A stretch of 63,097 nt of DNA, filler included, from Octopus bimaculoides (lineage: Eukaryota): the NCBI RefSeq assembly GCF_001194135.2. It is 4 parts of 4 records of this genome, joined end to end, with 100 filler letters (N's around TTAATTAATTAA, not from the genome) between each part and the next. Parts side by side here need not be neighbours in the genome. Positions count along the whole stretch, not along the records: positions 1 to 28,923 come from NC_068990.1; 3 more parts are not named here. One strand, 5' to 3'. Within the stretch, counting starts at the first letter, position 1, and each line of letters opens with the position of its first letter. Positions 1,226 to 26,354 of this stretch are shown here, piece by piece. The notes under the pieces are model-generated. The model was not told the DNA's origin. It did not search any database and saw nothing but the letters and a program-made list of their open reading frames with translations. Made by a program: the position numbers and the translations under genes.

Positions 1226-1750
1226 GCAGGTTTCGTGACAGACGAACTGCAGACAGAAACTTCGCTGCGGGCTAGCTAGGAAGTTGGTCAGCAGCAAAAC
1301 AAAAGGTGGTGGTGGTGTGTTTCCTAACATTTTTAATGTTGTAAATCAGGAGTCGTAATGCATCTAAGCACAGTATACGATAAACTCATTATCATTTTCG
1401 TTTTTTTAATTAAATACACTGGTTTGTGTTATTATAATTCACTTTTATTGCACTGGCAAGTTGGGTGAGGGGGGGGGGGGGGCTTTTACCATTTTTAATT
1501 TTCTATACCAAAATCGTTGAGTTTAAAAATTATTTCCGATGCTTATATGGTAAGTATACACTTTTACATGTTTCAGTCATTCAAAGTAAAACTCGTACTA
1601 AGGATCCATTGCTTCGTTTCACGCAACCTCTGCCACGGAGCTGCTATAAACGACTCTCACTTCGCTGCAAATATACGAAGCAAATTTCCGACCAGAGGAT
1701 AACATCGTGTAACCTTCGCTTAATTTCAGGGTCAACGTAAAGATCGAGAC

Positions 1751-1836
1751 ATCATCATCATCATCGTCGTCGTCGTCATCGTCATCGTCATCGTCATCAT
1801 CATTATCATCATTATTATTATTATTATTATTATTAT

Positions 1837-1886
<50 letters not shown>

Positions 1887-1912
1887 TCATCATCATCATC
1901 ATCATCATCATC
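1751..1912. repeat. Compound trinucleotide microsatellite (CAT/CGT/TAT/TAG)
   Basis: Direct reading. Confidence 0.95.
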
Positions 1913-1920
1913 GTTATTAA

Positions 1921-2129
1921 GGCGACGAGCTGGCAGAATCGTTAGCATGCTGGACGAAATGCTCAGTGGTGTTTCAACCGTCGCTACGTTCTGAGTTCAA
2001 ATTCCGCGGAGGTCGACTTTGCCTTTCATCCGTTCGGGGTCTATGAATTAAGTACGAGTTGCGTACTGGGGTCGAGGTAATCGACTTAACCCCTCCCGAA
2101 CAATTTCAGGCCTTGTACCTATAGTAGAA

Positions 2130-5040: not shown

Positions 5041-7047
5041 TATATCTTAAAGCAACACAAACAAAACAGGCGGACCGCAAAAAAAAAAAAAAAAAAAAAG
5101 TAGAATAATATACGTCTGCGTAGTTTCAGATGCAAAATATGCCGGCCGCTGTATTGTACGTCACTGGAGACTAACTTCTCTCTTTTATGACGATAGTTGT
5201 GTTCAACACACTTGGCTTATTAGTGCACAGCTCTCAGTGCTTTAATAACTCACAACAGAATGGGTGTATGATGTGACGTCAATTAACCAACAATGATTCA
5301 TTACGACATCTAGTTTGTAAATTAACACATAGGTGATAAACTTCTATGTGGTTGCTCCACATGCTAGAAATAAGAGCCAACTCTCCCTGAATTCATACCC
5401 TACCATTTGTAAAAGGAGATATTAGATACGGTAGCCCTAAATAAAATATCAGCAAAACAAGATGGGACTACAGTCGGGATTAATCAGCGTTAGGAATCTC
5501 GTTTTCTCACTGACAGGGATCTGAGATCAATCCCAGTAAAAATCTGTATTAAAATAACGGGTTATGAAAGGAGCCTAAAATATAAATAAAAAATTTTTTT
5601 TTGACGTCATAAGAATTTATAAACATTCGATAGGAGGCGGAGTAATTCTTTTTGAGAATTGGATCTCGAAGTACATATAATGCTATAATAGCAACTAAAT
5701 ATTGCGTTGAAAAACTCTTTTGGACAAAATTGTTGAAGGCCGCCCTTCGGGCGCGAACCCACATCACCTGTAGGCAACTCGTTTAGTTGAAGTTGTAAGA
5801 CTGACTTAGTTCCACAGATTTCGGGGAACTGATTTGACTTATTAGCCGAATCGTTCTTTACGTTCTAAGTTGAAATCACACCAAAGTCAGCTTCGCCTTT
5901 CATCTTTTCGGGGTCGATAAAATAAAGTTCCAGTTGAGCACTGGGATCGATGTAATCGACTATCCCGCTCCCCTTAAATTGTTGACCTTCAACCAACATT
6001 TGAAACAGTTTGTTAACAAAGTTTGTGCAACATTTCAAGATATGTCAAGAAGACCAGAAGCACGTGTGTGAGCAGTGACGCTTTTGTTTACAAACAACGA
6101 ACACACATGAAGACGAAGGGAAATACGGACCCTATCATTCAAACACATGTATATATATATANNNNNNNNNNNNNNNNNNNNNNNNNNNNNNNNNNNNNNN
6201 NNNNNNNNNNNNNNNNNNNNNNNNNNNNNNNNNNNNNNNNNNNNNNNNNNNNNNNNNNNNNNNNNNNNNNNNNNNNNNNNNNNNNNNNNNNNNNNNNNNN
6301 NNNNNNNNNNNNNNNNNNNNNNNNNNNNNNNNNNNNNNNNNNNNNNNNNNNNNNNNNNNNNNNNNNNNNNNNNNNNNNNNNNNNNNNNNNNNNNNNNNNN
6401 NNNNNNNNNNNNNNNNNNNNNNNNNNNNNNNNNNNNNNNNNNNNNNNNNNNNNNNNNNNNNNNNNNNNNNNNNNNNNNNNNNNNNNNNNNNNNNNNNNNN
6501 NNNNNNNNNNNNNNNNNNNNNNNNNNNNNNNNNNNNNNNNNNNNNNNNNNNNNNNNNNNNNNNNNNNNNNNNNNNNNNNNNNNNNNNNNNNNNNNNNNNN
6601 NNNNNNNNNNNNNNNNNNNNNNNNNNNNNNNNNNNNNNNNNNNNNNNNNNNNNNNNNNNNNNNNNNNNNNNNNNNNNNNNNNNNNNNNNNNNNNNNNNNN
6701 NNNNNNNNNNNNNNNNNNNNNNNNNNNNNNNNNNNNNNNNNNNNNNNNNNNNNNNNNNNNNNNNNNNNNNNNNNNNNNNNNNNNNNNNNNNNNNNNNNNN
6801 NNNNNNNNNNNNNNNNNNNNNNNNNNNNNNNNNNNNNNNNNNNNNNNNNNNNNNNNNNNNNNNNNNNNNNNNNNNNNNNNNNNNNNNNNNNNNNNNNNNN
6901 NNNNNNNNNNNNNNNNNNNNNNNNNNNNNNNNNNNNNNNNNNNNNNNNNNNNNNNNNNNNNNNNNNNNNNNNNNNNNNNNNNNNNNNNNNNNNNNNNNNN
7001 NNNNNNNNNNNNNNNNNNNNNNNNNNNNNNNNNNNNNNNNNNNNNAA

Positions 7048-9500: not shown

Positions 9501-10003
9501 TCTTTTCCATGCTGGCATGGGTTGGATGGCTTGATAAGAACTGGGAGGCCAAGGGCACGCCAGGTTCCATGGTCTTTTTTGGCTTGGGTTCTACGGCTGA
9601 ATGTACTATCTCTCTCTCCCTCCCTCCTTTCCCCCTCCCATCCCCCTCTTCTCACTCTCTTTCTCTATCTGTATGCATATATGTCTGCGTGTGTATTGCC
9701 TCCAGTGCCAAAAAAGTACCTTTGCCAGAGTAAACTGAATGTCCAGTCAGCTGTTTCATCCAGTCAAGTGTTGGGTCCAATATAATTGACTCGCTCCTTC
9801 CACAAAATTTCAGGACTTGCCCCTATAGCAGAAATAATATTTCAAAGACACATTGTTATACAACAAAATTTCGAAAATGTGACCTTCCTCCAGCTCATTT
9901 TAGAATAATCTTAGAAAAAAATGCTAAAATGGACACTAATGATATTGATAAATTATTTTGCACTTTAATTCCTAATTCTAAAACACTGCCTCCACTTCGT
10001 GAC

Positions 10004-10175
10004 AGAACGGTTGGTCGGTCGGTCGGTCGGTCGGTCAGTCGGTCGGTCGGTCGGTCGATCGATCAGTCGGTCGGTGGATCGATCGATCCGTCTGCCCGTC
10101 CGTCAGTCCGTCCGTCCGTCCGTCAGTCCGTCCGTCCGTCGGTCCGTCCGACGGTCAGTCCGTCGGTCGGTCAGT
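10004..10175. repeat. GC-rich (CGGT)/(CCGT) tetranucleotide repeat
   Basis: Direct reading; abuts the 3' end of an RTE fragment. Confidence 0.9.
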
Positions 10176-10550
10176 TCTCTCTGTACCATGGGGCACCAAA
10201 ATCCATAATACGATCTTTCCAATCAGTTTTGTTTTCTCTAACTGTTCTGGTCTCATTTCAGCTTCTCCACCCTTCTCAACTCCTGTTTTTTGTCAATAGT
10301 CCTTCACCATGTTGTTTTAGAGCACCCTACAGCTCTTTTCCCTTCAGTGCCACCATACAATCGCTTTCTCAATTTCATTTGAGGATGTGTCTGATCCTGT
10401 TCCAGCGTTTGCGTCCTTATTTCATCACTGACCACCGTTGTCTCATTTGCGTCATTTCAGACACTTGGCTGCCACTTGATGCTGAGTGTATTCTCCTTAA
10501 GCATCAACAATGTGGAGCTGATAAACAAAATGCGTCATATATGGATGATG
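10176..10550 (-). mobile_element. RTE-clade LINE 3' fragment
   Basis: Degenerate minus-strand translation CLRRI...RKRWNRIRHIL...DCMVAL, typical of the RTE C-terminus; ends GTGCCCCATGGTACAGAGAG before the tandem tail. Confidence 0.6.
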
Positions 10551-10617
10551 GCAGACGTATAAAAAAAAAAACTATTTAAAGCAATATTCTTTCTTTCTTT
10601 TTATTCTTTTATTCTTT

Positions 10618-12590: not shown

Positions 12591-14179
12591 TGTTTCCACG
12601 CAGTGGACGTGAACCCAGAACCAATTGGTTGGGAAGCAAGCTTCTTACCACACAGCCACACCTGCGCCATATATATAGTTCTGATCTACTTATCACCCAC
12701 ACTGCATTACTTCAGTATTATAACTCTGACTCCCTCATGTTCAACAATCTAGCTCCTGTGTTTCAGATTTTCTGTTTTGATTTTTTCGCCATCATATATT
12801 TACCTTGAATTGGAAAATCCGGCAGAATTTACTCCCATCATTTCATTTAATTGACAACCAAAATGTGTATTCTTTGACATAGAACTCTTTTAGTCTAGTT
12901 GAACTTTAGCCTTATTAACTTTTGAAATCATTGATTGCTTTCTTGCAGCTCTTTTTTTTATATATATTGAAGGTCTTTCAGTACTGTGAAAGATTTTATC
13001 ACAACTATACAAATGTCACTATGGAGACATTCATATAATTTAGAATCATTCTGACATTCTGACAGTTGCACATAAATGCTTAACTCTTTAGCATTCAGAT
13101 TATTCTGTCCAGTGCAATGCTTATTTATTGACATTGTTTTGAATTAATCATGGATTAACTCATAGCCTTCAGATTTTGATATAGTGTTTCTGTGTGTGTC
13201 TTTGTGTCAGTGTTTGTCTCCTACCATTGCTTGACAACCATGTTGGTGTGTTTTTGGAGCCATAACTTAGAAGTTCAGTGTCAGAGGCTACGACTGGTTG
13301 ACCTGAACGTAAAAGAGGTTGAATATTTGGGCTGGATATGGTCTGTCTAAATGTTATTGGGTTAATAACTTCTTTCTCAACCCCTTCGATACTGCCCCAC
13401 CTCAGACTGATTCTGGTACTATGAAACAAATTAAATGTTTTAAATCTGATTTAAATAAAAACTTTCCATCAAAATTTCATTTTTCATATTATATCCCAAA
13501 CACCAGCTTAAATAAAGATTTCAAACTTTGGCACAAGGCCAGCAATTTTATGGAAGAGGGTAAGTCAATTACAGCAGCTCCTTTGTTCACTGGTATCTTT
13601 TTTATCAATCCTGAAAGAACGAAAGGCAAAGTTGACCTCAGCAGAATTGAAAGGTAAAAACCTAGAAGAAATGCCACTGAACATTTTGTGTATATGTATA
13701 TATATATATATATATATATAAGTCAGTAAATAGTGGGGTTGTGTTAACCGCACGTGGAGAAATAATAGGAAAATGAAAAAAAGCCAGAATGCTGAACTGG
13801 AATGCAGACTACTAACCCCAAGATTCCGAGTTCGATTCCAAGCAGTGACCTGAATAATAATAATAATAATGCCCAGATGTAGTACCCTTTTTTTAAACCT
13901 AACAAAACTCTCAACTCTCATGCATCCTTATTTTTCCTACCAGTTTATACATGAACTACTATTGAACTACAAAAGCTCAAAGACAATATAATGTATGGGT
14001 ATATTTATTTTTTTATATATTATTGTCTTATATATTATTNNNNNNNNNNTTTTTCGCAATGAAAACCGGTTAGAAAAAATCTTTATTAAAATATGCTTCC
14101 AGTTCAGCATTCTGGCTTTTTTTCATTTTCCTATATATATATATATAGAGAGAGAGAGATAGATAGATATATATATATA

Positions 14180-14530
14180 GGTGCAGGAGTGGTTGTGTGG
14201 TAAGTAGCTTACTTACCAACTACATGGTTCCGGGTTCAGTCCCACTGAGTAGCACCTTGGGCAAGTGTCTTCTACTAAAGTCTCAGGCCAACCATAGCCA
14301 TATGTGTGTGTGTGTGTGTATGTGTGTTTGTATGTCTGTGTTTGTTCCCCCACCATTGCTTGACAACTGATGTTGGTGTGTTTATGTCCCTGTAACTTAG
14401 CAGTTCAGCAAAGGAGACCGATGGAATTGGGGCTGGGCTTGCAAAGAGTGAGTCCTGGGGTCGATTTGTTCGATTGAAGGCAGTGCTCCAGCGTGTTCAC
14501 ACTCAGATGACTGAAATAAAAGAAAAAAAT
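14180..14530 (+). mobile_element. SINE family A, full-length
   Basis: GGTGCAGGAGTGGTTGTGTGGTAAG head through to the A-rich tail. Confidence 0.88.
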
Positions 14531-16118
14531 AAGAAAAGAAATACATACATACATATATATTACAAACATATAAGAGGGATGACCACTAAGTGGACATCCA
14601 TTATGCTAGAAGTAGACCCCCTATGGTCTTACCACTAAGGAAAGATTCTCAAAAAAATTCAGCAAAGGCCAGGACGTAAGCGAGCAAGACAAATGAAAAG
14701 ATACAAAATATAAAGATTAATCACAAACCTGGTTTCATTGTTACCACTTACGTAATTCTTACGTAAATGTCTGCAATTCATCAGTGTGATCGTCAGAGTA
14801 AAATATAATTTGCAGAACTATACACGAGACATCCGCATGAGATTGAACAGGCATCTAGTTCTACCAATTACATTTGGGGTTATATTTCAAAAGTCTTCGT
14901 TTTGGCACGCCAAAATACCAGAAATAATTCCGCAGAAAATAATTCTCCGCAGTGAATTTTGCCGGTTTTAGAACATGGTTATTTAAATTTAAAATAATAA
15001 GGGTGAAAAATTGAATATTAATTTGATTAATATCAATTTAAAACCAGTGGCCTAGCATATTGAAAAATCTGAAGATTCAGGAAAATTATATTACATACAT
15101 ATAAGAGGGATGACCACTAAGTGGACATCTATTNNNNNNNNNNNNNNNNNNNNNNNNNNNNNNNNNNNNNNNNNNNNNNNNNNNNNNNNNNNNNNNNNNN
15201 NNNNNNNNNNNNNNNNNNNNNNNNNNNNNNNNNNNNNNNNNNNNNNNNNNNNNNNNNNNNNNNNNNNNNNNNNNNNNNNNNNNNNNNNNNNNNNNNNNNN
15301 NNNNNNNNNNNNNNNNNNNNNNNNNNNNNNNNNNNNNNNNNNNNNNNNNNNNNNNNNNNNNNNNNNNNNNNNNNNNNNNNNNNNNNNNNNNNNNNNNNNN
15401 NNNNNNNNNNNNNNNNNNNNNNNNNNNNNNNNNNNNNNNNNNNNNNNNNNNNNNNNNNNNNNNNNNNNNNNNNNNNNNNNNNNNNNNNNNNNNNNNNNNN
15501 NNNNNNNNNNNNNNNNNNNNNNNNNNNNNNNNNNNNNNNNNNNNNNNNNNNNNNNNNNNNNNNNNNNNNNNNNNNNNNNNNNNNNNNNNNNNNNNNNNNN
15601 NNNNNNNNNNNNNNNNNNNNNNNNNNNNNNNNNNNNNNNNNNNNNNNNNNNNNNNNNNNNNNNNNNNNNNNNNNNNNNNNNNNNNNNNNNNNNNNNNNNN
15701 NNNNNNNNNNNNNNNNNNNNNNNNNNNNNNNNNNNNNNNNNNNNNNNNNNNNNNNNNNNNNNNNNNNNNNNNNNNNNNNNNNNNNNNNNNNNNNNNNNNN
15801 NNNNNNNNNNNNNNNNNNNNNNNNNNNNNNNNNNNNNNNNNNNNNNNNNNNNNNNNNNNNNNNNNNNNNNNNNNNNNNNNNNNNNNNNNNNNNNNNNNNN
15901 NNNNNNNNNNNNNNNNNNNNNNNNNNNNNNNNNNNNNNNNNNNNNNNNNNNNNNNNNNNNNNNNNNNNNNNNNNNNNNNNNNNNNNNNNNNNNNNNNNNN
16001 NNNNNNNNNNNNNNNNNNNNNNNNNNNNNNNNNNNNNNNNNNNNNNNNNNNNNNNNNNNNNNNNNNNNNNNNNNNNNNNNNNNNNNNNNNNNNNNNNNNN
16101 NNNNNNNNNNNNNNNNNN

Positions 16119-16398
16119 CCTAAAGCTCCACGAGGCTCCGGCAGGGGATGGTGGCAAACCCTGCTGTACTCTTCCACCACAACTTTCTCTCTCTTTCTTC
16201 CTGTTTCTGTTGTACCTGTATTTCAAAGGGCCAGCCTTGTCACACTCTGTGTCATGCTGAATATCCCCGAAAACTATGTTAAGGGTACACGTGTCTGTGG
16301 AGTGCTCAGCCACTTGCACGTTAATTTCACGAGCAGGCTGTTCCGTTGATCGGATCAATTGGAACCCTCAACGTCGTAAGCGACGGAGTGCCAACAAC
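16119..16398 (+). mobile_element. SINE family C; head in gap
   Basis: Matches 11682-12063. Confidence 0.85.
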
Positions 16399-16782
16399 TG
16401 GACTGCAGCCATGCTGGGGCACAATTTTAAAGAGTTTTAATCAAATGGATCAACATTGGTACTTAGTTTTTTAAAAGTCTGGATTTCTTCTATGGTACTC
16501 CTTCACTGAACTGCTAAGTTAGGGAGATGTAAACAAACCAACATCAGTTGGTAAGCGGTGTGGAGGCAAACACTAACATTCATACACCCAAACATATAGA
16601 GGCTTAACTAGAGAAGTGTGTCCTCCACTTCACTTTGTTTCCTCATAAATTTCTGGGAAATGAAAATTGTTTTTAATGAAATTGTTTGCAGCTATGTCCC
16701 AGATGGTGTAATTATGCTACAGATACACATATATACACATACATAAATACATGTATATATACATTCGCATATACATATATAT

Positions 16783-16816
<34 letters not shown>

Positions 16817-17024
16817 NNNNNNNNNNNNNNNNNNNNNNNNNNNNNNNNNNNNNNNNNNNNNNNNNNNNNNNNNNNNNNNNNNNNNNNNNNNNNNNNNNNN
16901 NNNNNNNNNNNNNNNNCAAAATGAAAAACAGAACATAAACAGAGCACAGAAAACAAACAGGCCACTAAGATCCTCAAAGTCTAATACGAAATCCATCTCC
17001 GACTATTAATTAATACTGTTCTCT

Positions 17025-17230
17025 ACTCTAGGTACAAGGCCCAAAATTTTGGGGGAGGGGGCCAGTCGATTAAATGAACCCTCAGTATGCAACTGGTACT
17101 TAATTTATCGACCCTCAAAGGATGAAAGGCAAAGTCGACCTCGGTGGAATTTGAACTCAGAATGTAAAGACAGACAAAATACCGCGAAGCATTTCGCCCG
17201 GCGTGCTAACATTTCTGCCAGCTCACCACC
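17025..17230 (-). mobile_element. SINE family B (Nin-like)
   Basis: Reverse complement of the 1921-2130 motifs. Confidence 0.8.
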
Positions 17231-17744
17231 TTACTATTAATTAATACTATTTCCCTAACTATCACTGGGGAGTTCCTGAAGTAGATCCAACGGAAGTGTA
17301 CCACAACTACGGATGACAACAGGTAGCCTAGACTGTGCCGGTGCTCTACGCAACATTTAAACACACTAATCGAATTATACGTATTTGTACAAATTATTTA
17401 TTACCTCCATGGCGGAAGTAAAGAATACAGACACCACCCGTTTTCGGCGTAACAAAAACCCTAACCTTAACCCTAAACACGTACGAGTGTACGTACTCTT
17501 TACATTCGCCAAAAACTGGTATGCATATGTATTTATATATGTACGTGTATATGAAAGATAATAGGTGTACGTGTGTGTGTGTGTGTGCGCGAGTAAACTG
17601 ACTACAAATAGAGCTGAACGCGGTTCGCGCGCACATCTCGACTGCTCTCACAAATGAGAATACTAAAAATGAACTCGTTCGATCTCAAAAATTAAGTAAA
17701 AAACGAAGAAAAGAAAAAAAAAAAAAACGAAAAGTAATCCAGAA

Positions 17745-17912
17745 TCCTTGTCCGGCGCCGGATCGATCCCAAAATCTAATCAGTTCTGCCAGTCACGAGG
17801 CTTAAACATCCCTGAAAGTTTCATCCGAATCCATTTGCGGTTTGAGATATCTTGTCCACGGACAAACAAACGTGACCGAAAACAATACCTCTGACTTCAA
17901 AGGCGGACGTAA
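17745..17912 (-). mobile_element. Helentron/HINE-like fragment
   Basis: Reverse complement of the 1020-1130 and 54775-54930 family. Confidence 0.6.
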
Positions 17913-18745
17913 TAAAAAGTTTTTAAGAAAACTAATGAACAACCATATGATAGAGTTTGACATTTCTGCGTGTCAAATAGGAAGAATGTCGGAGAGACAT
18001 CTGGAAATTATAAGGTAACAAATTTGGGGAACACACACAGGTGTAGATACACCTTAGTTAAATAGCGATATATATATCAAAGTAATTGCAAACTATCAAC
18101 TCACCTCGAAAAGAAAACAAAAATATTCGAATAGCGATGCATGTATGTCAATTTCGACTAGAATTTATTTTAGAAATGTAAACAAATAAAAATGCAATGA
18201 CTAAATAATGACATGAACTTGCAATGGTACATTTAGAAATGGAATAACAAATAATTCGTTAAATAAAGCCTCAATTCTTCCATATCAACATTTATCACAC
18301 ACGATAGTAACTCGCTCACATGCGCTTTAATAATTAAGTTTGTAGGTGAACAAACGACAATCAGACACATACTGGAAAAAAAAAAGTTGTAAAAATACTT
18401 TGGCATAATAAACAATAACGTCTGAAATTAATTTCTGAAAAAATTATAAAATACAATATTGATTTAAAATGAATGTATTTCTTTCTTAAATTAAAAGATT
18501 AAATCATGTTGAACAAAACAGGAAAGAAAATAGTTGGGCTTTCTTTGGCGATATAGCGGTATGTCAGAGCTATTTACATCTGTATTTAAACTTATATTGG
18601 AAATGATTTTTTTTAGATTCCTAAATGTCTATGATTTGAGGTATCTATGACATATGTGGAATTGAAATGAAAGTCATTCATTTAAAGACATCCGTAAATA
18701 ACATGAACACATTTGTTTTAAATAACGCGGAAATGGAAGTTTATA

Positions 18746-19871
18746 TTACGTGTGTGTTTCTGTATTACAGTTGTTGTTTTTGATTTCCTCGTAAATAAGA
18801 CCTAACCATTCCATTTGGTTCAATTCAATATCGGAATATCTGTCACAAAAATTTGGTGCATGCTTATAGTCAGTCTGTTGGAAATGGTCCTCAAAGAAAC
18901 GATGTTTCATTGCCTCATCCACAGAGATTCGGTTATCTACATCTAAATTAAATATTTGGTCCAAAAGACTAAGTGTGTCTTCATCTGTGGTATTAAAAAA
19001 GGTTGAGAAATCTTGTTTTACAAAAGTTCCGAATTGTTTAATCCTATCTATAGCATCTTCACTGGTAAATTTCTTTAGCATTTCATAATCCGGTGTTCCG
19101 ACTAGACATAATATCTGCTTTACCTGATCGTTGAAATTTTGCCCTCGTATCACAGCTCGTTTTGTTAACATTTCACCCAGGATACAACCCACAGACCACA
19201 CATCTGCTGTTTGATTGTATTTTTCCCAGTTCAGGATTATTTCTGGTGCTCGGTACCNNNNNNNNNNNNNNNNNNNNNNNNNNNNNNNNNNNNNNNNNNN
19301 NNNNNNNNNNNNNNNNNNNNNNNNNNNNNNNNNNNNNNNNNNNNNNNNNNNNNNNNNNNNNGCCAAAATCCATAATTTTGATGCAATTATCAGCAGTAAC
19401 ACCGATGTTGCTGGGTTTTAAGTCACGGTGGATGACCCCAGCTGAATGAATATAATAAAGTCCGCAGAATATTTGGTAGACCAGGGACTTGATAAGGGCT
19501 AACCCCATCTCCTCGCTTTTCAACATCGTTTTCAGATCTTTCGGATAGAATGTGGAAACAAGGTAGAGATTATCCAAATCATTTTTACATATTGCTGTTG
19601 TAAATATATCGACCAGATCGATCACATTTTTGTGTTTCATGTGCTTTAGCAAACATACTTCGCGGTATGTACGTTTTGTTGCAGTTAACGAAGAGAAAGG
19701 CCGATACAGTTGCTTAATGGCCACCTTCGAGTCAGTAAGTTTGTTATGAGCAACTGACACGTTACTGTAACTGCCTCCTCCTATATATTCCAAACAACTG
19801 TAATAGTCTGGGTGAATCCATTTAATACCGAATTCTTCAGTGAGTTGGAAGCACGATGGGATAATGGCCAT
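18746..19871 (-). CDS. MAPK14-like (p38): Divergent p38-family MAP kinase, apparently intronless; activation loop hidden in N gap 19258-19361
   Basis: Motifs GGGSYSNV, VAIK, RPF..KRTYRE, HRDLKPSN, DFG | WYRAPE, LNW, DVWSVGC. ATG at 19871 puts F8, W18 and G170 at human p38-alpha numbering. TAA stop at 18746-18748. The two halves are in different frames only across the gap. Confidence 0.92.
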
Positions 19872-20457
19872 CGTATATGTTTCTCTCTTTCGCGCACCTT
19901 TATAATTAGTTGTTGACACTAATAAAGTACTGGGCGAAGTGCTTAAATTAGTCCAACTGTCAGAGTAGTTACTACAAGCAGTGACGTAACGATAAATCAT
20001 TCTGGCCGAGAAGATAACATGAGAAATGGTATTTCCCCAAACTATGAGAAAACCCTGAGCATTAAAGAAATTACGTAATTTAAGAAGAAACTTGTAGGTC
20101 ACCATTAAATACACAAAGGAAAATTGTCGACCTGCTTATATGACGCATAATTCCAGATTTGATTTAAAATACAACAGACGTAACGCATGACTACATAGTA
20201 AGCAGTATATCACAACAAACATTCGCTTGTTTTAGGTGCGTATGTAGTAGGCGTTAGACGCCCTCTCGGTCCTCACATCTTCACATATGCAGGAATGGGA
20301 CCCTCTATTGTGTTCATCCACTCAACAACCAAATTACTAGGCAACGTACTTTCTCACGAATTCTATTAAAATATAAATATTTCACGACAAAGGAAACCTA
20401 TTATAAACACTCACTCAGGTTAATTTTTACTGTTACACCTGTCATCAAACTCTGATC

Positions 20458-21118
20458 GGCATACCTACGCAATTGTGCCCCACTCTGCTTCAACTTTGTT
20501 TCTTCATAAATTCCTGAAAAATGGATATTTACTAACGAAATTTCCTACAAATACCCTTCAGATGATGCTAATTCTGATTATATTGGAATTTGTGTTGGTG
20601 GAGCTTCAGAAGATGAGTCGACTTCGTTTTGTCAACTTTCAAAGAAGCCGGTAATTTTTGATGAAAATTTTTACGAATACCTTTCAGAATGTGTAGTTTA
20701 CGATTATATCGGAATTAAATATATATATATAAAAAAAAAAAAAGTGGCAGGCTTGTACACATATATAACGACACATATTAAATATGTCTACAAAATGAAA
20801 CTTAAAATTTCGAAAAAAAATATTGTGATGCATCAATATGTATGTGTACGAGTGCACCAGTTTCTTTTTCACATTAAATTCTTATATAGTTGTAACTGAC
20901 ACACTCTGAAAAGTATATGTAGAAAATGTCATTAAAAAATTACCCATTTTTCTGAAACATATGAGGCAACAAAACAATTTTCACACTAAATACCGATATA
21001 ATCGCAGTCTTCCCCCATCTGAAACGTATTTGTAGAAAATTTCATTAAAAAAAAATATTCATTTTCCTAGAAGTAGTGAGGAAACAAAAGTGGCGGGGCG
21101 CAATTGTATAGGTATGCC
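20458..21118. mobile_element. Foldback MITE with long imperfect TIRs (Merlin-like)
   Basis: Termini GGCATACC...GGTATGCC; 8-bp TSD CTCTGATC/CTCTGGTC (20450-20457, 21119-21126); motif GAAATTTTCTACAAATAC.TTTCAGA twice direct on the left and twice inverted on the right. Confidence 0.8.
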
Positions 21119-25319: not shown

Positions 25320-26354
25320 ACTCTTTTACATGTTTCAGTCATTTGACTGTGGCCATGCTGGAGCACCGTCTTTAGTCGAGAAAATCGACCCCAGGACTTA
25401 TTCTTTGCAAGCCTAATACTTATTCTATCGGGTCTCTTTTTGTCGAACCGCTAAGTTACGGGGACGTAAACACATCAGCATCGGTTGTCAAGCGATGGTG
25501 CGGGAACACACAGACACACACACACATAGATATATATATATATATATATATANNNNNNNNNNNNNNNNNNNNNNNNNNNNNNNNNNNNNNNNNNNNNNNN
25601 NNNNNNNNNNNNNNNNNNNNNNNNNNNNNNNNNNNNNNNNNNNNNNNNNNNNNNNNNNNNNNNNNNNNNNNNNNNNNNNNNNNNNNNNNNNNNNNNNNNN
25701 NNNNNNNNNNNNNNNNNNNNNNNNNNNNNNNNNNNNNNNNNNNNNNNNNNNNNNNNNNNNNNNNNNNNNNNNNNNNNNNNNNNNNNNNNNNNNNNNNNNN
25801 NNNNNNNNNNNNNNNNNNNNNNNNNNNNNNNNNNNNNNNNNNNNNNNNNNNNNNNNNNNNNNNNNNNNNNNNNNNNNNNNNNNNNNNNNNNNNNNNNNNN
25901 NNNNNNNNNNNNNNNNNNNNNNNNNNNNNNNNNNNNNNNNNNNNNNNNNNNNNNNNNNNNNNNNNNNNNNNNNNNNNNNNNNNNNNNNNNNNNNNNNNNN
26001 NNNNNNNNNNNNNNNNNNNNNNNNNNNNNNNNNNNNNNNNNNNNNNNNNNNNNNNNNNNNNNNNNNNNNNNNNNNNNNNNNNNNNNNNNNNNNNNNNNNN
26101 NNNNNNNNNNNNNNNNNNNNNNNNNNNNNNNNNNNNNNNNNNNNNNNNNNNNNNNNNNNNNNNNNNNNNNNNNNNNNNNNNNNNNNNNNNNNNNNNNNNN
26201 NNNNNNNNNNNNNNNNNNNNNNNNNNNNNNNNNNNNNNNNNNNNNNNNNNNNNNNNNNNNNNNNNNNNNNNNNNNNNNNNNNNNNNNNNNNNNNNNNNNN
26301 NNNNNNNNNNNNNNNNNNNNNNNNNNNNNNNNNNNNNNNNNNNNNNNNNNNNNN

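What the first reader, a model, noticed from the sequence alone, without database searches (positions are those of the whole stretch)
18746..19871. Intronless, strongly diverged p38 MAPK: a probable retrogene paralogue
Seen: 170 codons to DFG and 169 codons from YRAPE to the stop, with no introns, stops or indels relative to p38-alpha. All catalytic residues (K, alphaC E, HRD, DFG, APE) are intact, but many other positions are substituted. Established: metazoan p38 genes are normally multi-exon. Inference: an old retrocopy kept open by selection in TE-saturated DNA, possibly a lineage-specific p38 with a specialised role.
Basis: partly seen in the sequence, partly recalled or inferred. Interest (0 to 1): 0.7.

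Follow-up and report, generated by a model that had tools for sequence, protein, structure and literature searches.

The report
Intronless divergent p38 kinase gene, octopus
This is an intact, selectively maintained, single-exon p38-type stress kinase gene of Octopus bimaculoides, one of a small tandem cluster of fast-evolved intronless p38-like genes found only in cephalopods, not a lone retrocopy beside an ordinary parent gene.

Summary
On the minus strand, 19871-19362 encodes M1-G170 (ending in DFG) and 19257-18746 encodes Y188 to the stop. Both halves align to p38-alpha without indels, and the catalytic residues are intact.

The 104-N gap would break the frame at its nominal length. Orthologous loci in O. 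vulgaris and O. sinensis, and an unplaced O. bimaculoides contig identical to both gap flanks, show the true distance is 49 nt. It is in frame and encodes LARQVSLKMTGYVQTRW, so the TGY motif is present.

dN/dS against O. vulgaris is 0.16.

The gene is not a stand-alone retrocopy. It belongs to a monophyletic clade (100% bootstrap) of single-exon p38-like genes. Named members are all octopods (Octopus and Argonauta). Unnamed members are probably other cephalopods. Three of these genes (A1 = this gene, A2, B) lie within about 50 kb. Its immediate origin is therefore probably local duplication of an already intronless gene. Any retroposition lies at the base of the clade.

The clade is only 41-49% identical to canonical p38, whereas canonical p38s are 68-77% identical across phyla. 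The hinge and docking surfaces are remodelled.

No canonical octopod p38 surfaced in two targeted searches. Replacement of the parent gene is possible but unproven.

The parts
19362..19871 (-). N-terminal coding half, M1-G170: glycine loop GGGSYSNV, K53, E71, hinge S106-T-F-Y-P-K111, HRD, DFG
   Evidence: Aligns to p38-alpha 17-170 without indels. Pfam Pkinase positions 2-143. 95% identical to O. vulgaris A1.
19258..19361 (.). Assembly gap, 104 N nominal. The true content is 49 nt encoding L171-W187 (LARQVSLKMTGYVQTRW), the activation loop with the TGY dual-phosphorylation motif.
   Evidence: Orthologous loci L001 and L002 have 49 nt here. Unplaced O. bimaculoides contig L013 has 100% identical flanks and bridges the gap. 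The paralogue A2 is broken at the same spot in this assembly.
18746..19257 (-). C-terminal coding half: the last 2 nt of the W187 codon, Y188-T356, and the TAA stop at 18748-18746. Contains APE, the MAPK insert, a degenerate CD site (Q313, T315, D316, Y317) and the L16 helix.
   Evidence: Aligns to p38-alpha 188-345 without indels. Pfam Pkinase positions 163-263. 92% identical to O. vulgaris A1.
19872..20722 (-). Unique 5' flank, conserved with O. vulgaris (82-94% per 100 nt). Presumed 5'UTR and promoter. The open frame upstream of M1 is not conserved (5-nt indel).
   Evidence: Colinear blastn block and mafft profile. No repeat copies in 20001-21000.
17706..18745 (-). 3' flank, colinear with O. 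vulgaris (74-94% per 100 nt). Presumed 3'UTR. Holds an A8 run at 18607-18614, about 130 nt past the stop. No AATAAA between the stop and that run.

Best explanation
Window 18746-19871 (minus strand) is the O. bimaculoides copy of gene 'A1', a 356-residue p38-family MAP kinase encoded by a single exon.

Shown:
- The reading frame is intact once the assembly gap is given its true length of 49 nt.
- The activation loop carries TGY and has p38 length.
- All catalytic residues are present.
- The orthologue, 94% identical, models as a p38 fold.
- The gene has evolved under purifying selection since before the Octopus-Argonauta split.
- It sits in a conserved cluster with two other single-exon p38-like genes (A2, B).
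- All relatives found form one isolated clade, whose named members are all octopods.

Inferred:
- One p38 mRNA was retroposed in an early cephalopod, which would explain the loss of all ten or more introns at once.
- The intronless gene then duplicated locally into B and A, and later into A1 and A2, possibly with gene conversion between A1 and A2.
- The copies diverged quickly, chiefly on the hinge, the D-motif docking groove and the ED and CD sites, while keeping catalysis.

Mechanistically it should be switched on by a MAP2K that phosphorylates T180 and Y182, and it should phosphorylate Ser/Thr-Pro substrates. Its set of activators, substrates and phosphatases, and its sensitivity to inhibitors, are expected to differ from those of canonical p38.
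For: - Identity and frame.
- Gap closed at 49 nt with TGY.
- Species and locus: O. bimaculoides CM046610.1 at about 23.566 Mb. Synteny with O. vulgaris and O. sinensis runs for kilobases on both sides.
- Selection: dN 0.028, dS 0.170, ratio 0.16 over 339 codons; 0.21 against A2; 0.12-0.13 against Argonauta. 17 synonymous against 6 nonsynonymous changes on the O. bimaculoides branch. All 8 genes examined have no internal stop.
- Single-exon relatives: Ovul A1 and Osin A1 1071 nt; Obim B 1095 nt, 50 kb away on the same strand; Ovul A2 1077 nt, 27 kb away on the opposite strand; Argonauta A1 and A2; and A-like and B-like genes in one ENA assembly.
- Canonical mollusc p38 is multi-exon: Aplysia, 48 kb, at least 10 exons.
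- Clade: NJ bootstrap 100% with a long stem. The A and B subclades each have 76% support, and window + Ovul A1 has 100%. In the 50%-identity library the whole clade collapses to one representative at 663 bits, and the next hit scores 499 bits or less.
- Fold: pLDDT 86.5, pTM 0.88. Best PDB match is phosphorylated p38-alpha, TM 0.92, rmsd 1.7 A. The top 50 matches are all p38.
- Remodelled surfaces: L108F, M109Y, G110P, A111K, G36S, Q120E, H126L, F129S, N159T, E160A, C162N, D313Q, D315T, E317Y. Several are shared by the whole clade.
Against: - No retroposition hallmark survives. There is no poly(A) tract at the end of the unit, and only one chance-level 12-nt AT-rich direct repeat. Retroposition is therefore inferred from intron absence alone.
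- No expression data could be consulted. No Logan (read-assembly) member was seen for the octopod A1 and A2 protein clusters, although B and the unnamed A-like proteins have many.
- The bridging contig L013 is an A1/A2 mosaic, so it might belong to A2 or to another haplotype and not to this exact gap.
- The tree is neighbour-joining without JNK, ERK or Hog1 outgroups. The clade groups with other long branches, so its place among p38s is unresolved.
- The organisms behind P0005-P0008 are unnamed. 'Cephalopod-wide' is an inference.
Confidence: 0.75

Rival explanations
1. Stand-alone retrogene. This particular gene was made by retroposition of the mRNA of an intron-containing octopus p38, which still exists elsewhere in the genome.
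For: The coding sequence is intronless. Homology between the A1 and A2 loci is confined to -40..+29 around the coding sequence, although dS is only 0.27-0.35. The Argonauta A1 and A2 copies lie on different contigs and share only a 1.4-kb, transcript-sized unit. RNA-mediated copying within the family is therefore not excluded.
Against: Its nearest relatives are themselves intronless and lie within 27-50 kb. No poly(A) tract or target-site duplication was found. No intron-bearing octopod p38 was found. The gene clusters with A2 and B, not with any canonical p38.
Confidence: 0.1
2. Decaying retropseudogene whose frame is open only by chance or by recent origin.
For: It lies in repeat-rich DNA. 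The frame cannot be read through in the window because of the gap. GenBank splits it into two partial models.
Against: dN/dS is 0.12-0.21 in every comparison. Orthologues are intact in O. vulgaris, O. sinensis and Argonauta. All catalytic residues are kept. The O. bimaculoides branch has 17 synonymous against 6 nonsynonymous changes.
Confidence: 0.03
3. Assembly artefact. The two halves belong to different paralogues, or the gap hides extra sequence such as an intron or a repeat, so no continuous gene exists at this site.
For: A2 has a gap at the same place, and the bridging contig is an A1/A2 mosaic. A1 and A2 are identical over codons 181-210 in O. vulgaris.
Against: Both halves are closer to O. 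vulgaris A1 than to A2. The flanks are colinear with the gap-free O. vulgaris and O. sinensis A1 loci.
Confidence: 0.05
4. Foreign origin: a contaminant, or horizontal transfer of a fungal Hog1-type gene, as NCBI's 'HOG1-like' names might suggest.
For: It has no introns. NCBI names some orthologues 'HOG1' or 'HOG1-like'.
Against: It sits on a 94.6-Mb chromosome with kilobases of synteny in two other Octopus genomes. Every hit outside the clade in the best 120 that carries a name, or whose closest named relative could be found, is a metazoan p38. The motifs TRWYRAPE, LNW and YNQT-D-WS are of the metazoan p38 type (the comparison with Hog1 rests on my own knowledge).
Confidence: 0.01

Closest known systems
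Canonical metazoan p38 MAPK (MAPK14/p38-alpha; Aplysia californica p38, P0066)
   Same: Same length and colinear alignment without indels. TGY activation loop of p38 length. All catalytic residues present. Predicted fold superposes on phosphorylated p38-alpha at TM 0.92.
   Different: Only 39-42% identical, whereas canonical p38s are 68-77% identical from mollusc to vertebrate. 38% of pan-metazoan invariant positions are changed, concentrated in the hinge (LMGA to FYPK), the glycine loop (G36S), the docking groove (Q120E, H126L, F129S), the ED site (E160A) and the CD site (D313Q, D315T, E317Y). Single exon, against at least 10 exons over 48 kb.
Octopod paralogues A2 (O. vulgaris CAI9729300.1, O. 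sinensis XP_029640821.1) and B (O. bimaculoides XP_014785742.1 / LOC106880370)
   Same: Same clade, same single-exon structure, same chromosome cluster, and the same clade-wide substitutions (G36S, M109Y, A184Q, V204A, A214G, F223I).
   Different: A2 is 85% identical and B 50% identical to this protein. B keeps more canonical residues (71% of invariant positions; D313 and E160 retained) and has Logan members, which A1 and A2 lack.
Gastropod second, divergent p38 (Aplysia LOC101857669 = P0013; Arion P0036 and P0080)
   Same: A lineage-specific extra p38 paralogue in a mollusc class, listed as a p38-family member lacking the MAPK conserved site in PMC9334734.
   Different: About 60% identical to canonical p38 and only 42-46% identical to the cephalopod clade. 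The two grouped together only among the long branches of the NJ tree, so a shared origin is neither shown nor excluded. Its intron status was not examined.
Functional kinase retrogenes and retrogene replacement (human CSNK2A3, the intronless CK2-alpha gene, PMC8817493; amphioxus SYCP1 retrogene replacement, PMC5803294)
   Same: An intronless copy of a normally multi-exon housekeeping or signalling gene, kept functional. The possible loss of the multi-exon parent would parallel SYCP1.
   Different: Here the intronless gene has expanded into a tandem family and diverged far from the parent type. Neither retroposition nor loss of the parent is demonstrated.

Membership tests
Eukaryotic protein kinase superfamily (Pfam PF00069) | Pkinase domain above the gathering score, with the VAIK Lys, alphaC Glu, HRD, DFG and APE | tested here: met
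   N-half 111 bits and C-half 58 bits (cut-off 31.7); the orthologue scores 197 bits. Residues read directly from the sequence.
p38 subfamily of MAP kinases | Thr-Gly-Tyr dual-phosphorylation motif in the activation loop | tested here: met
   Hidden by the N gap in the window itself. The same-species bridging contig with identical flanks, and all 10 clade members, read MTGYVQ(T/S)RW.
p38 subfamily of MAP kinases | Short, p38-length activation loop (17 residues between DFG and YRAPE) and best sequence and fold matches to p38 | tested here: met
   p38-alpha residues 171-187 are left unmatched. The gap is 49 nt plus 2 nt, which is 17 codons. The best 60 PDB sequence hits and the top 50 fold hits are all p38 alpha, beta, gamma or delta. 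No direct score against JNK or ERK was obtained.
p38 subfamily of MAP kinases | Acidic common-docking (CD) patch D313/D315/D316 and ED site E160/D161, which bind the D-motifs of MKK3/6, MK2 and phosphatases (feature list from my own knowledge of p38-alpha) | tested here: not met
   The window has Q313, T315, D316 and Y317, and A160 with D161. The docking-groove positions Q120E, H126L and F129S are also changed.
p38 subfamily of MAP kinases | Thr106 gatekeeper and the Met109-Gly110 hinge, which determine sensitivity to pyridinyl-imidazole inhibitors (from my own knowledge) | tested here: not met
   The window has S106, then T107-F108-Y109-P110-K111. Y109 is invariant in the clade.
Canonical (orthologous) metazoan p38 | Groups with the slowly evolving p38 orthologues of other molluscs and lophotrochozoans | tested here: not met
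   It forms a separate long-branched clade and is 39-42% identical. It collapses to its own representative in the 50% library.
Processed retrogene | Lacks all the introns of the parental gene type | tested here: met
   Single ORF, against at least 10 coding exons in Aplysia p38.
Processed retrogene | 3' poly(A) remnant and flanking target-site duplications | tested here: not met
   Only an A8 run about 130 nt past the stop, with no AATAAA before it. There is one 12-nt AT-rich direct repeat (18459-18470 and 20159-20170), where I estimate about 0.4 would be expected by chance. Loss of these marks is expected after a long time, so their absence says little either way.
Processed retrogene | An identifiable intron-containing parent at an unlinked locus | tested here: inconclusive
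   No named cephalopod canonical p38 appeared in the best 120 hits with Aplysia p38 or with a 16-sequence lophotrochozoan p38 profile. Eleven of the unnamed clusters were opened and none was cephalopod. The lists are capped at 120, and no octopus genome could be searched directly.

The most novel reading that the evidence does not exclude
Octopods, and perhaps all coleoid cephalopods, have lost the ancestral multi-exon, slowly evolving p38 gene. On this reading their only p38-type kinases are this retrogene-derived, tandemly expanded, fast-evolved intronless family with rewired docking surfaces. That would be retrogene replacement of a core stress and immune kinase, followed by sub- or neofunctionalisation.
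Probability: 0.35. Interest if true: 0.65.

Novelty: new variant of a known kind. Interest (0 to 1): 0.42.

Why it matters
p38 is among the most conserved signalling kinases in animals. The canonical proteins compared here are 68-77% identical from mollusc to vertebrate.

A cephalopod-restricted family that keeps the catalytic machinery and the TGY switch, but has lost all introns and rewritten the hinge and docking surfaces, points to a rewired stress and immune MAPK module in this lineage.

If no canonical p38 remains in these animals, that has two consequences. Pharmacological and antibody tools built on vertebrate p38, such as SB203580-type inhibitors and docking-based reporters, may not behave as assumed in octopus. 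Transcriptome studies that label a cephalopod gene 'MAPK14' would also need re-examination.

It also shows a practical point: near-identical tandem paralogues produced matching assembly gaps in both copies.

Tried and rejected
- Literature: six full-text searches on p38, MAPK14, intronless genes or retrogenes combined with octopus or cephalopod found no description of this family. A reference in PMC13230822 was irrelevant.
- The qPCR primers for 'MAPK14' of Amphioctopus fangsiao (PMC11228953) match none of the fetched loci with up to 4 mismatches. I could not tell which gene that study measured.
- Search for a canonical octopod p38: Aplysia p38 as query, a lophotrochozoan p38 profile, assignment of unnamed hits to their nearest named taxa, and opening of unnamed clusters. 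None was cephalopod. One unnamed cluster turned out to be oysters, which shows that a representative can hide the names of its members.
- The intronless canonical-like p38 proteins P0191 and P0192 (ENA assembly ERZ25072999) were tested as a possible cephalopod parent. They share no repeats with any cephalopod locus and come from a different assembly than the clade members of ERZ21867824, so the organism stays unknown.
- Retroposition marks were sought at the window gene and at the Argonauta A1/A2 pair. There is no poly(A); the unit borders are microsatellites.
- tRNA and Rfam scans of the window were empty.
- A maximum-likelihood dN/dS run timed out, so Nei-Gojobori values are reported.
- dS is saturated for the A-versus-B comparisons.

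Full report
**1. What is in the sequence**

The feature lies on the minus strand. An ATG at 19871 opens 170 codons that end in ...IKIMDFG at 19362. A run of 104 N follows (19361-19258). Then come two bases (GG), 169 codons beginning YRAPEIILNW..., and a TAA at 18748-18746.

HMMER against all PDB chains aligns residues 17-170 to p38-alpha 17-170, and the second half to p38-alpha 188-345. Neither alignment has an insertion or deletion (E = 3e-41 and 7e-33). The 60 best chains in each search are p38 alpha, beta or gamma. Window numbering therefore equals p38-alpha numbering. K53, E71, HRD 148-150, N155, DFG 168-170 and APE 190-192 are all in place.

Pfam Pkinase covers profile positions 2-143 and 163-263.

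**2. The gap, tested first**

At its nominal length of 104 the two halves are out of frame. Four independent results show that the real distance is 49 nt, which restores the frame (510 + 49 + 512 = 1071 nt).

- Exactly 17 p38 residues, or 19 Pfam positions, are unaccounted for.
- The orthologous loci of O. vulgaris (L001) and O. sinensis (L002) align colinearly with the window for more than 850 nt upstream and more than 1000 nt downstream. Both have 49 nt where the window has N.
- An unplaced 718-bp contig of the same O. bimaculoides assembly (LGKD02124281.1, L013) is 100% identical to the window for 114 nt on one side of the gap and 187 nt on the other. It bridges the gap with those same 49 nt, which encode LARQVSLKMTGYVQTRW.
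- In the intron-rich Aplysia p38 gene, residues 168-207 lie in one exon. No ancestral intron is therefore expected here.

One caveat applies. The outer parts of L013 match the paralogue A2 and not A1, so it is a mosaic. It could be a collapsed-repeat contig, an allele carrying a conversion tract, or a chimera.

The A2 gene of this assembly is broken at the same place (P0228 ends ...DFGLA, P0227 starts TRWYRAPE). In O. vulgaris, A1 and A2 have 0 differences in 87 nt around the loop. Near-identity of the paralogues is the likely cause of both gaps.

**3. Where it comes from, and its orthologues**

The window is Octopus bimaculoides chromosome CM046610.1 at about 23.566 Mb. The best protein hits are listed below. 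Identities exclude the gap; one search's own figure for P0001, 89%, counts the 17 X residues as mismatches.

| Protein | Organism | Identity to the window protein |
|---|---|---|
| P0001 (A1) | O. vulgaris; also encoded in O. sinensis | 94% |
| P0002 (A2) | O. vulgaris | 85% |
| P0003, P0004 | Argonauta hians | 72% |
| P0005-P0008 | unnamed (Logan and ENA assemblies) | 54-58% |
| P0009 (B, LOC106880370) | O. bimaculoides | 50% |
| P0010 (B) | Argonauta hians | 50% |
| Best canonical p38 (P0013, Aplysia) | gastropod | 42% |

**4. Gene structure of the relatives**

Every relative whose locus could be fetched is a single uninterrupted ORF:

- Ovul A1 and Osin A1, 1071 nt;
- Obim B, 1095 nt;
- Ovul A2, 1077 nt;
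- Argonauta A1, 1071 nt, and A2, 1080 nt;
- the A-like P0007 and the B-like P0226, both from ENA assembly ERZ21867824.

By contrast, the Aplysia canonical p38 spans 48 kb with at least 10 coding exons.

In O. bimaculoides, B lies about 50 kb from the window gene on the same strand. In O. vulgaris, A2 lies about 27 kb from A1 on the opposite strand. The protein accession numbers of B and A2 differ by three. This is a tandem cluster.

**5. Selection**

Nei-Gojobori estimates over 339 codons:

| Comparison | dN | dS | dN/dS |
|---|---|---|---|
| Window vs O. vulgaris A1 | 0.028 | 0.170 | 0.16 |
| Window vs A2 | 0.076 | 0.355 | 0.21 |
| Window vs Argonauta A1, A2 | 0.178-0.180 | 1.33-1.51 (near saturation) | 0.12-0.13 |

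When changes are polarised with A2, the O. bimaculoides branch itself carries 17 synonymous and 6 nonsynonymous codon changes. None of the eight genes has an internal stop. Flank identity (about 74-94% per 100 nt) is in line with dS. The pseudogene reading is rejected.

**6. Phylogeny and isolation of the family**

I built a neighbour-joining tree of 42 p38 proteins (354 columns, 200 bootstraps).

- The cephalopod sequences form one clade (100%) on a long stem.
- They split into A (octopod A plus P0005-7, 76%) and B (Obim B, Argonauta B and P0008, 76%).
- Window + Ovul A1 has 100% support, with Ovul A2 as sister (100%).
- The two Argonauta A copies are a separate duplication (100%).

The clade groups with other long branches (a fish MAPK13 and the divergent Aplysia paralogue). 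That grouping is probably an artefact, so its position among p38s is unresolved.

A profile of the ten clade members was searched against 1.84 billion 50%-identity representatives. The whole clade is represented by a single protein (663 bits) and the next hit scores 499 bits or less. No intermediate relatives exist in that library.

**7. How the protein differs**

Canonical p38s are 68-77% identical between mollusc, brachiopod and vertebrate. The clade is 39-49% identical to them. Of 126 positions invariant in 24 canonical p38s (cnidarian to vertebrate), the window protein keeps 71 of the 114 that can be scored (62%). B-type proteins keep 71-73%.

The changes cluster in these places:

- the glycine loop (A34S, G36S);
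- the gatekeeper and hinge (T106S by the alignment, then L108F, M109Y, G110P, A111K);
- the D-motif docking groove (Q120E, H126L, F129S);
- the ED region (N159T, E160A, C162N, E163C);
- the P+1 region (A184Q);
- the CD site (D313Q, D315T, E317Y, P318K; only D316 remains).

Several changes are shared by all clade members: G36S, M109Y, A184Q, V204A, A214G and F223I. The C-lobe is more diverged from canonical p38 than the N-lobe (36% against 50%).

An AlphaFold2 model of the O. vulgaris orthologue has pLDDT 86.5 and pTM 0.88. It superposes on dual-phosphorylated p38-alpha with TM 0.92 and rmsd 1.7 A, and the top 50 PDB matches are all p38.

I infer that catalysis and TGY-dependent activation are retained, while partner recognition and inhibitor binding have probably changed. 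The functional meaning of the CD, ED, hinge and gatekeeper residues comes from established knowledge of p38-alpha and was not tested here.

**8. Origin**

Loss of ten or more introns at once is the classic signature of retroposition. Because A1, A2, B and the unnamed relatives are all intronless and monophyletic, that event belongs at the base of the clade, not to this gene. This gene's own origin is best explained by local duplication.

No poly(A) tract or credible target-site duplication remains.

Two observations keep some RNA-mediated copying within the family possible.

- A1/A2 homology is confined to -40..+29 around the coding sequence, even though dS is only about 0.3.
- The Argonauta A1 and A2 copies sit on different contigs and share only a 1.4-kb unit bordered by microsatellites.

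Gene conversion limited to the coding region is an alternative explanation for the first observation.

**9. Is there an ordinary p38 in octopus?**

Two searches were designed to surface one: Aplysia p38 as query and a 16-sequence lophotrochozoan p38 profile. Among their best 120 hits they returned canonical p38s of gastropods, bivalves, annelids, a brachiopod, crustaceans, arachnids, insects and, many vertebrates. They returned none from O. bimaculoides, O. sinensis, O. vulgaris or Argonauta, whose proteomes are in the database.

Most unnamed hits are closest to named non-cephalopod taxa. About a dozen have no named relative above roughly 80% identity and stay unassigned. None of the eleven unnamed clusters that were opened contains a cephalopod protein.

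This suggests that octopods lack a slowly evolving p38. I put the probability of true parent loss at about 0.35.

**10. Comparison with what is known, and verdict**

The protein works like a p38 and meets the structural definition: kinase domain, TGY, short activation loop, p38 fold. It fails the canonical docking-site and hinge features, and it is not an orthologue of canonical p38.

Orthologues carry automatic NCBI names (MAPK14, HOG1-like, p38b-like). Six literature searches found no description of an intronless cephalopod p38 family.

I rate it a new variant of a known kind, of moderate interest. The interest would rise if the canonical gene proves to be absent.

Noticed in passing
window 19258-19361; L013 (LGKD02124281.1) 1-718; O. 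bimaculoides A2 partial proteins P0227 and P0228: Both tandem paralogues (A1 and A2) are broken by a gap at the same codons in the chromosome-scale assembly. An unplaced 718-bp contig carries the missing piece as an A2-A1-A2 mosaic. In O. vulgaris, A1 and A2 differ at 0 of 87 nt over codons 181-210. This suggests gene conversion, or a collapsed repeat, as the cause of the gaps.
   Followed up: partly
window 14405-20105 minus strand (L004 10001-15701): The GenBank annotation splits the gene into two models. One is a 248-aa model that starts 78 codons upstream of the conserved Met. That extension is not conserved in O. vulgaris, which has a 5-nt indel there. The other is a 175-aa multi-exon model running from inside the C-lobe to about 4 kb downstream. 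Both are probably artefacts of the gap.
   Followed up: partly
window 1-28923: There are seven N gaps: 2252-2666, 6162-7045, 14040-14049, 15134-16118, 16817-16916, 19258-19361 and 25553-26354. Several are bordered by microsatellites that translate as YIYIYI, seen as such only in ORF translations. At least 37-44% of the non-N bases belong to interspersed repeats of about 150-440 bp, with up to 11 copies. There are no tRNA or Rfam matches. The kilobase upstream of the gene is repeat-free.
   Followed up: partly
L006 4799-6211 and L007 4759-6205 (Argonauta hians): The two Argonauta A-type copies lie on different contigs. They share only a 1.4-kb unit (about -200 to +140 around the coding sequence; 87% identity, dS 0.2) bordered by (GA)n, (CA)n and (CT)n microsatellites, with no poly(A). 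How they were copied is unclear.
   Followed up: partly
L010 1001-2140; L011 10001-11140 (ENA assembly ERZ25072999): An unidentified eukaryotic assembly carries two 99%-identical single-exon genes for a canonical-type p38 (379 aa; 77-79% identical to brachiopod and scorpion p38). Intronless p38 genes therefore also exist outside the cephalopod clade. A third 99%-identical protein, P0196, was not traced to an assembly.
   Followed up: partly
P0013 (Aplysia LOC101857669), P0036 and P0080 (Arion), P0044, P0091, P0118: Gastropods have their own second, divergent p38 lineage, about 60% identical to canonical p38. In Aplysia it lies on the same 586-kb contig as the canonical gene. Whether it is related to the cephalopod clade is unresolved.
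   Followed up: no
window 1619-1948 minus strand; 9929-10579 plus strand: There are low-complexity ORFs: one with poly-Asp, poly-Thr and poly-Asn runs, and one with an SVGRSV/RPSV repeat. They reflect simple repeats and are unlikely to be genes.
   Followed up: no
protein clusters of P0001, P0002, P0009, P0005, P0006, P0008: No Logan (read-assembly) members were seen for the octopod A1 and A2 proteins. B has a few, and the unnamed A-like and B-like proteins occur on up to 125-134 short, transcript-sized contigs. This hints that octopod A1 and A2 are expressed weakly or in restricted tissues.
   Followed up: no
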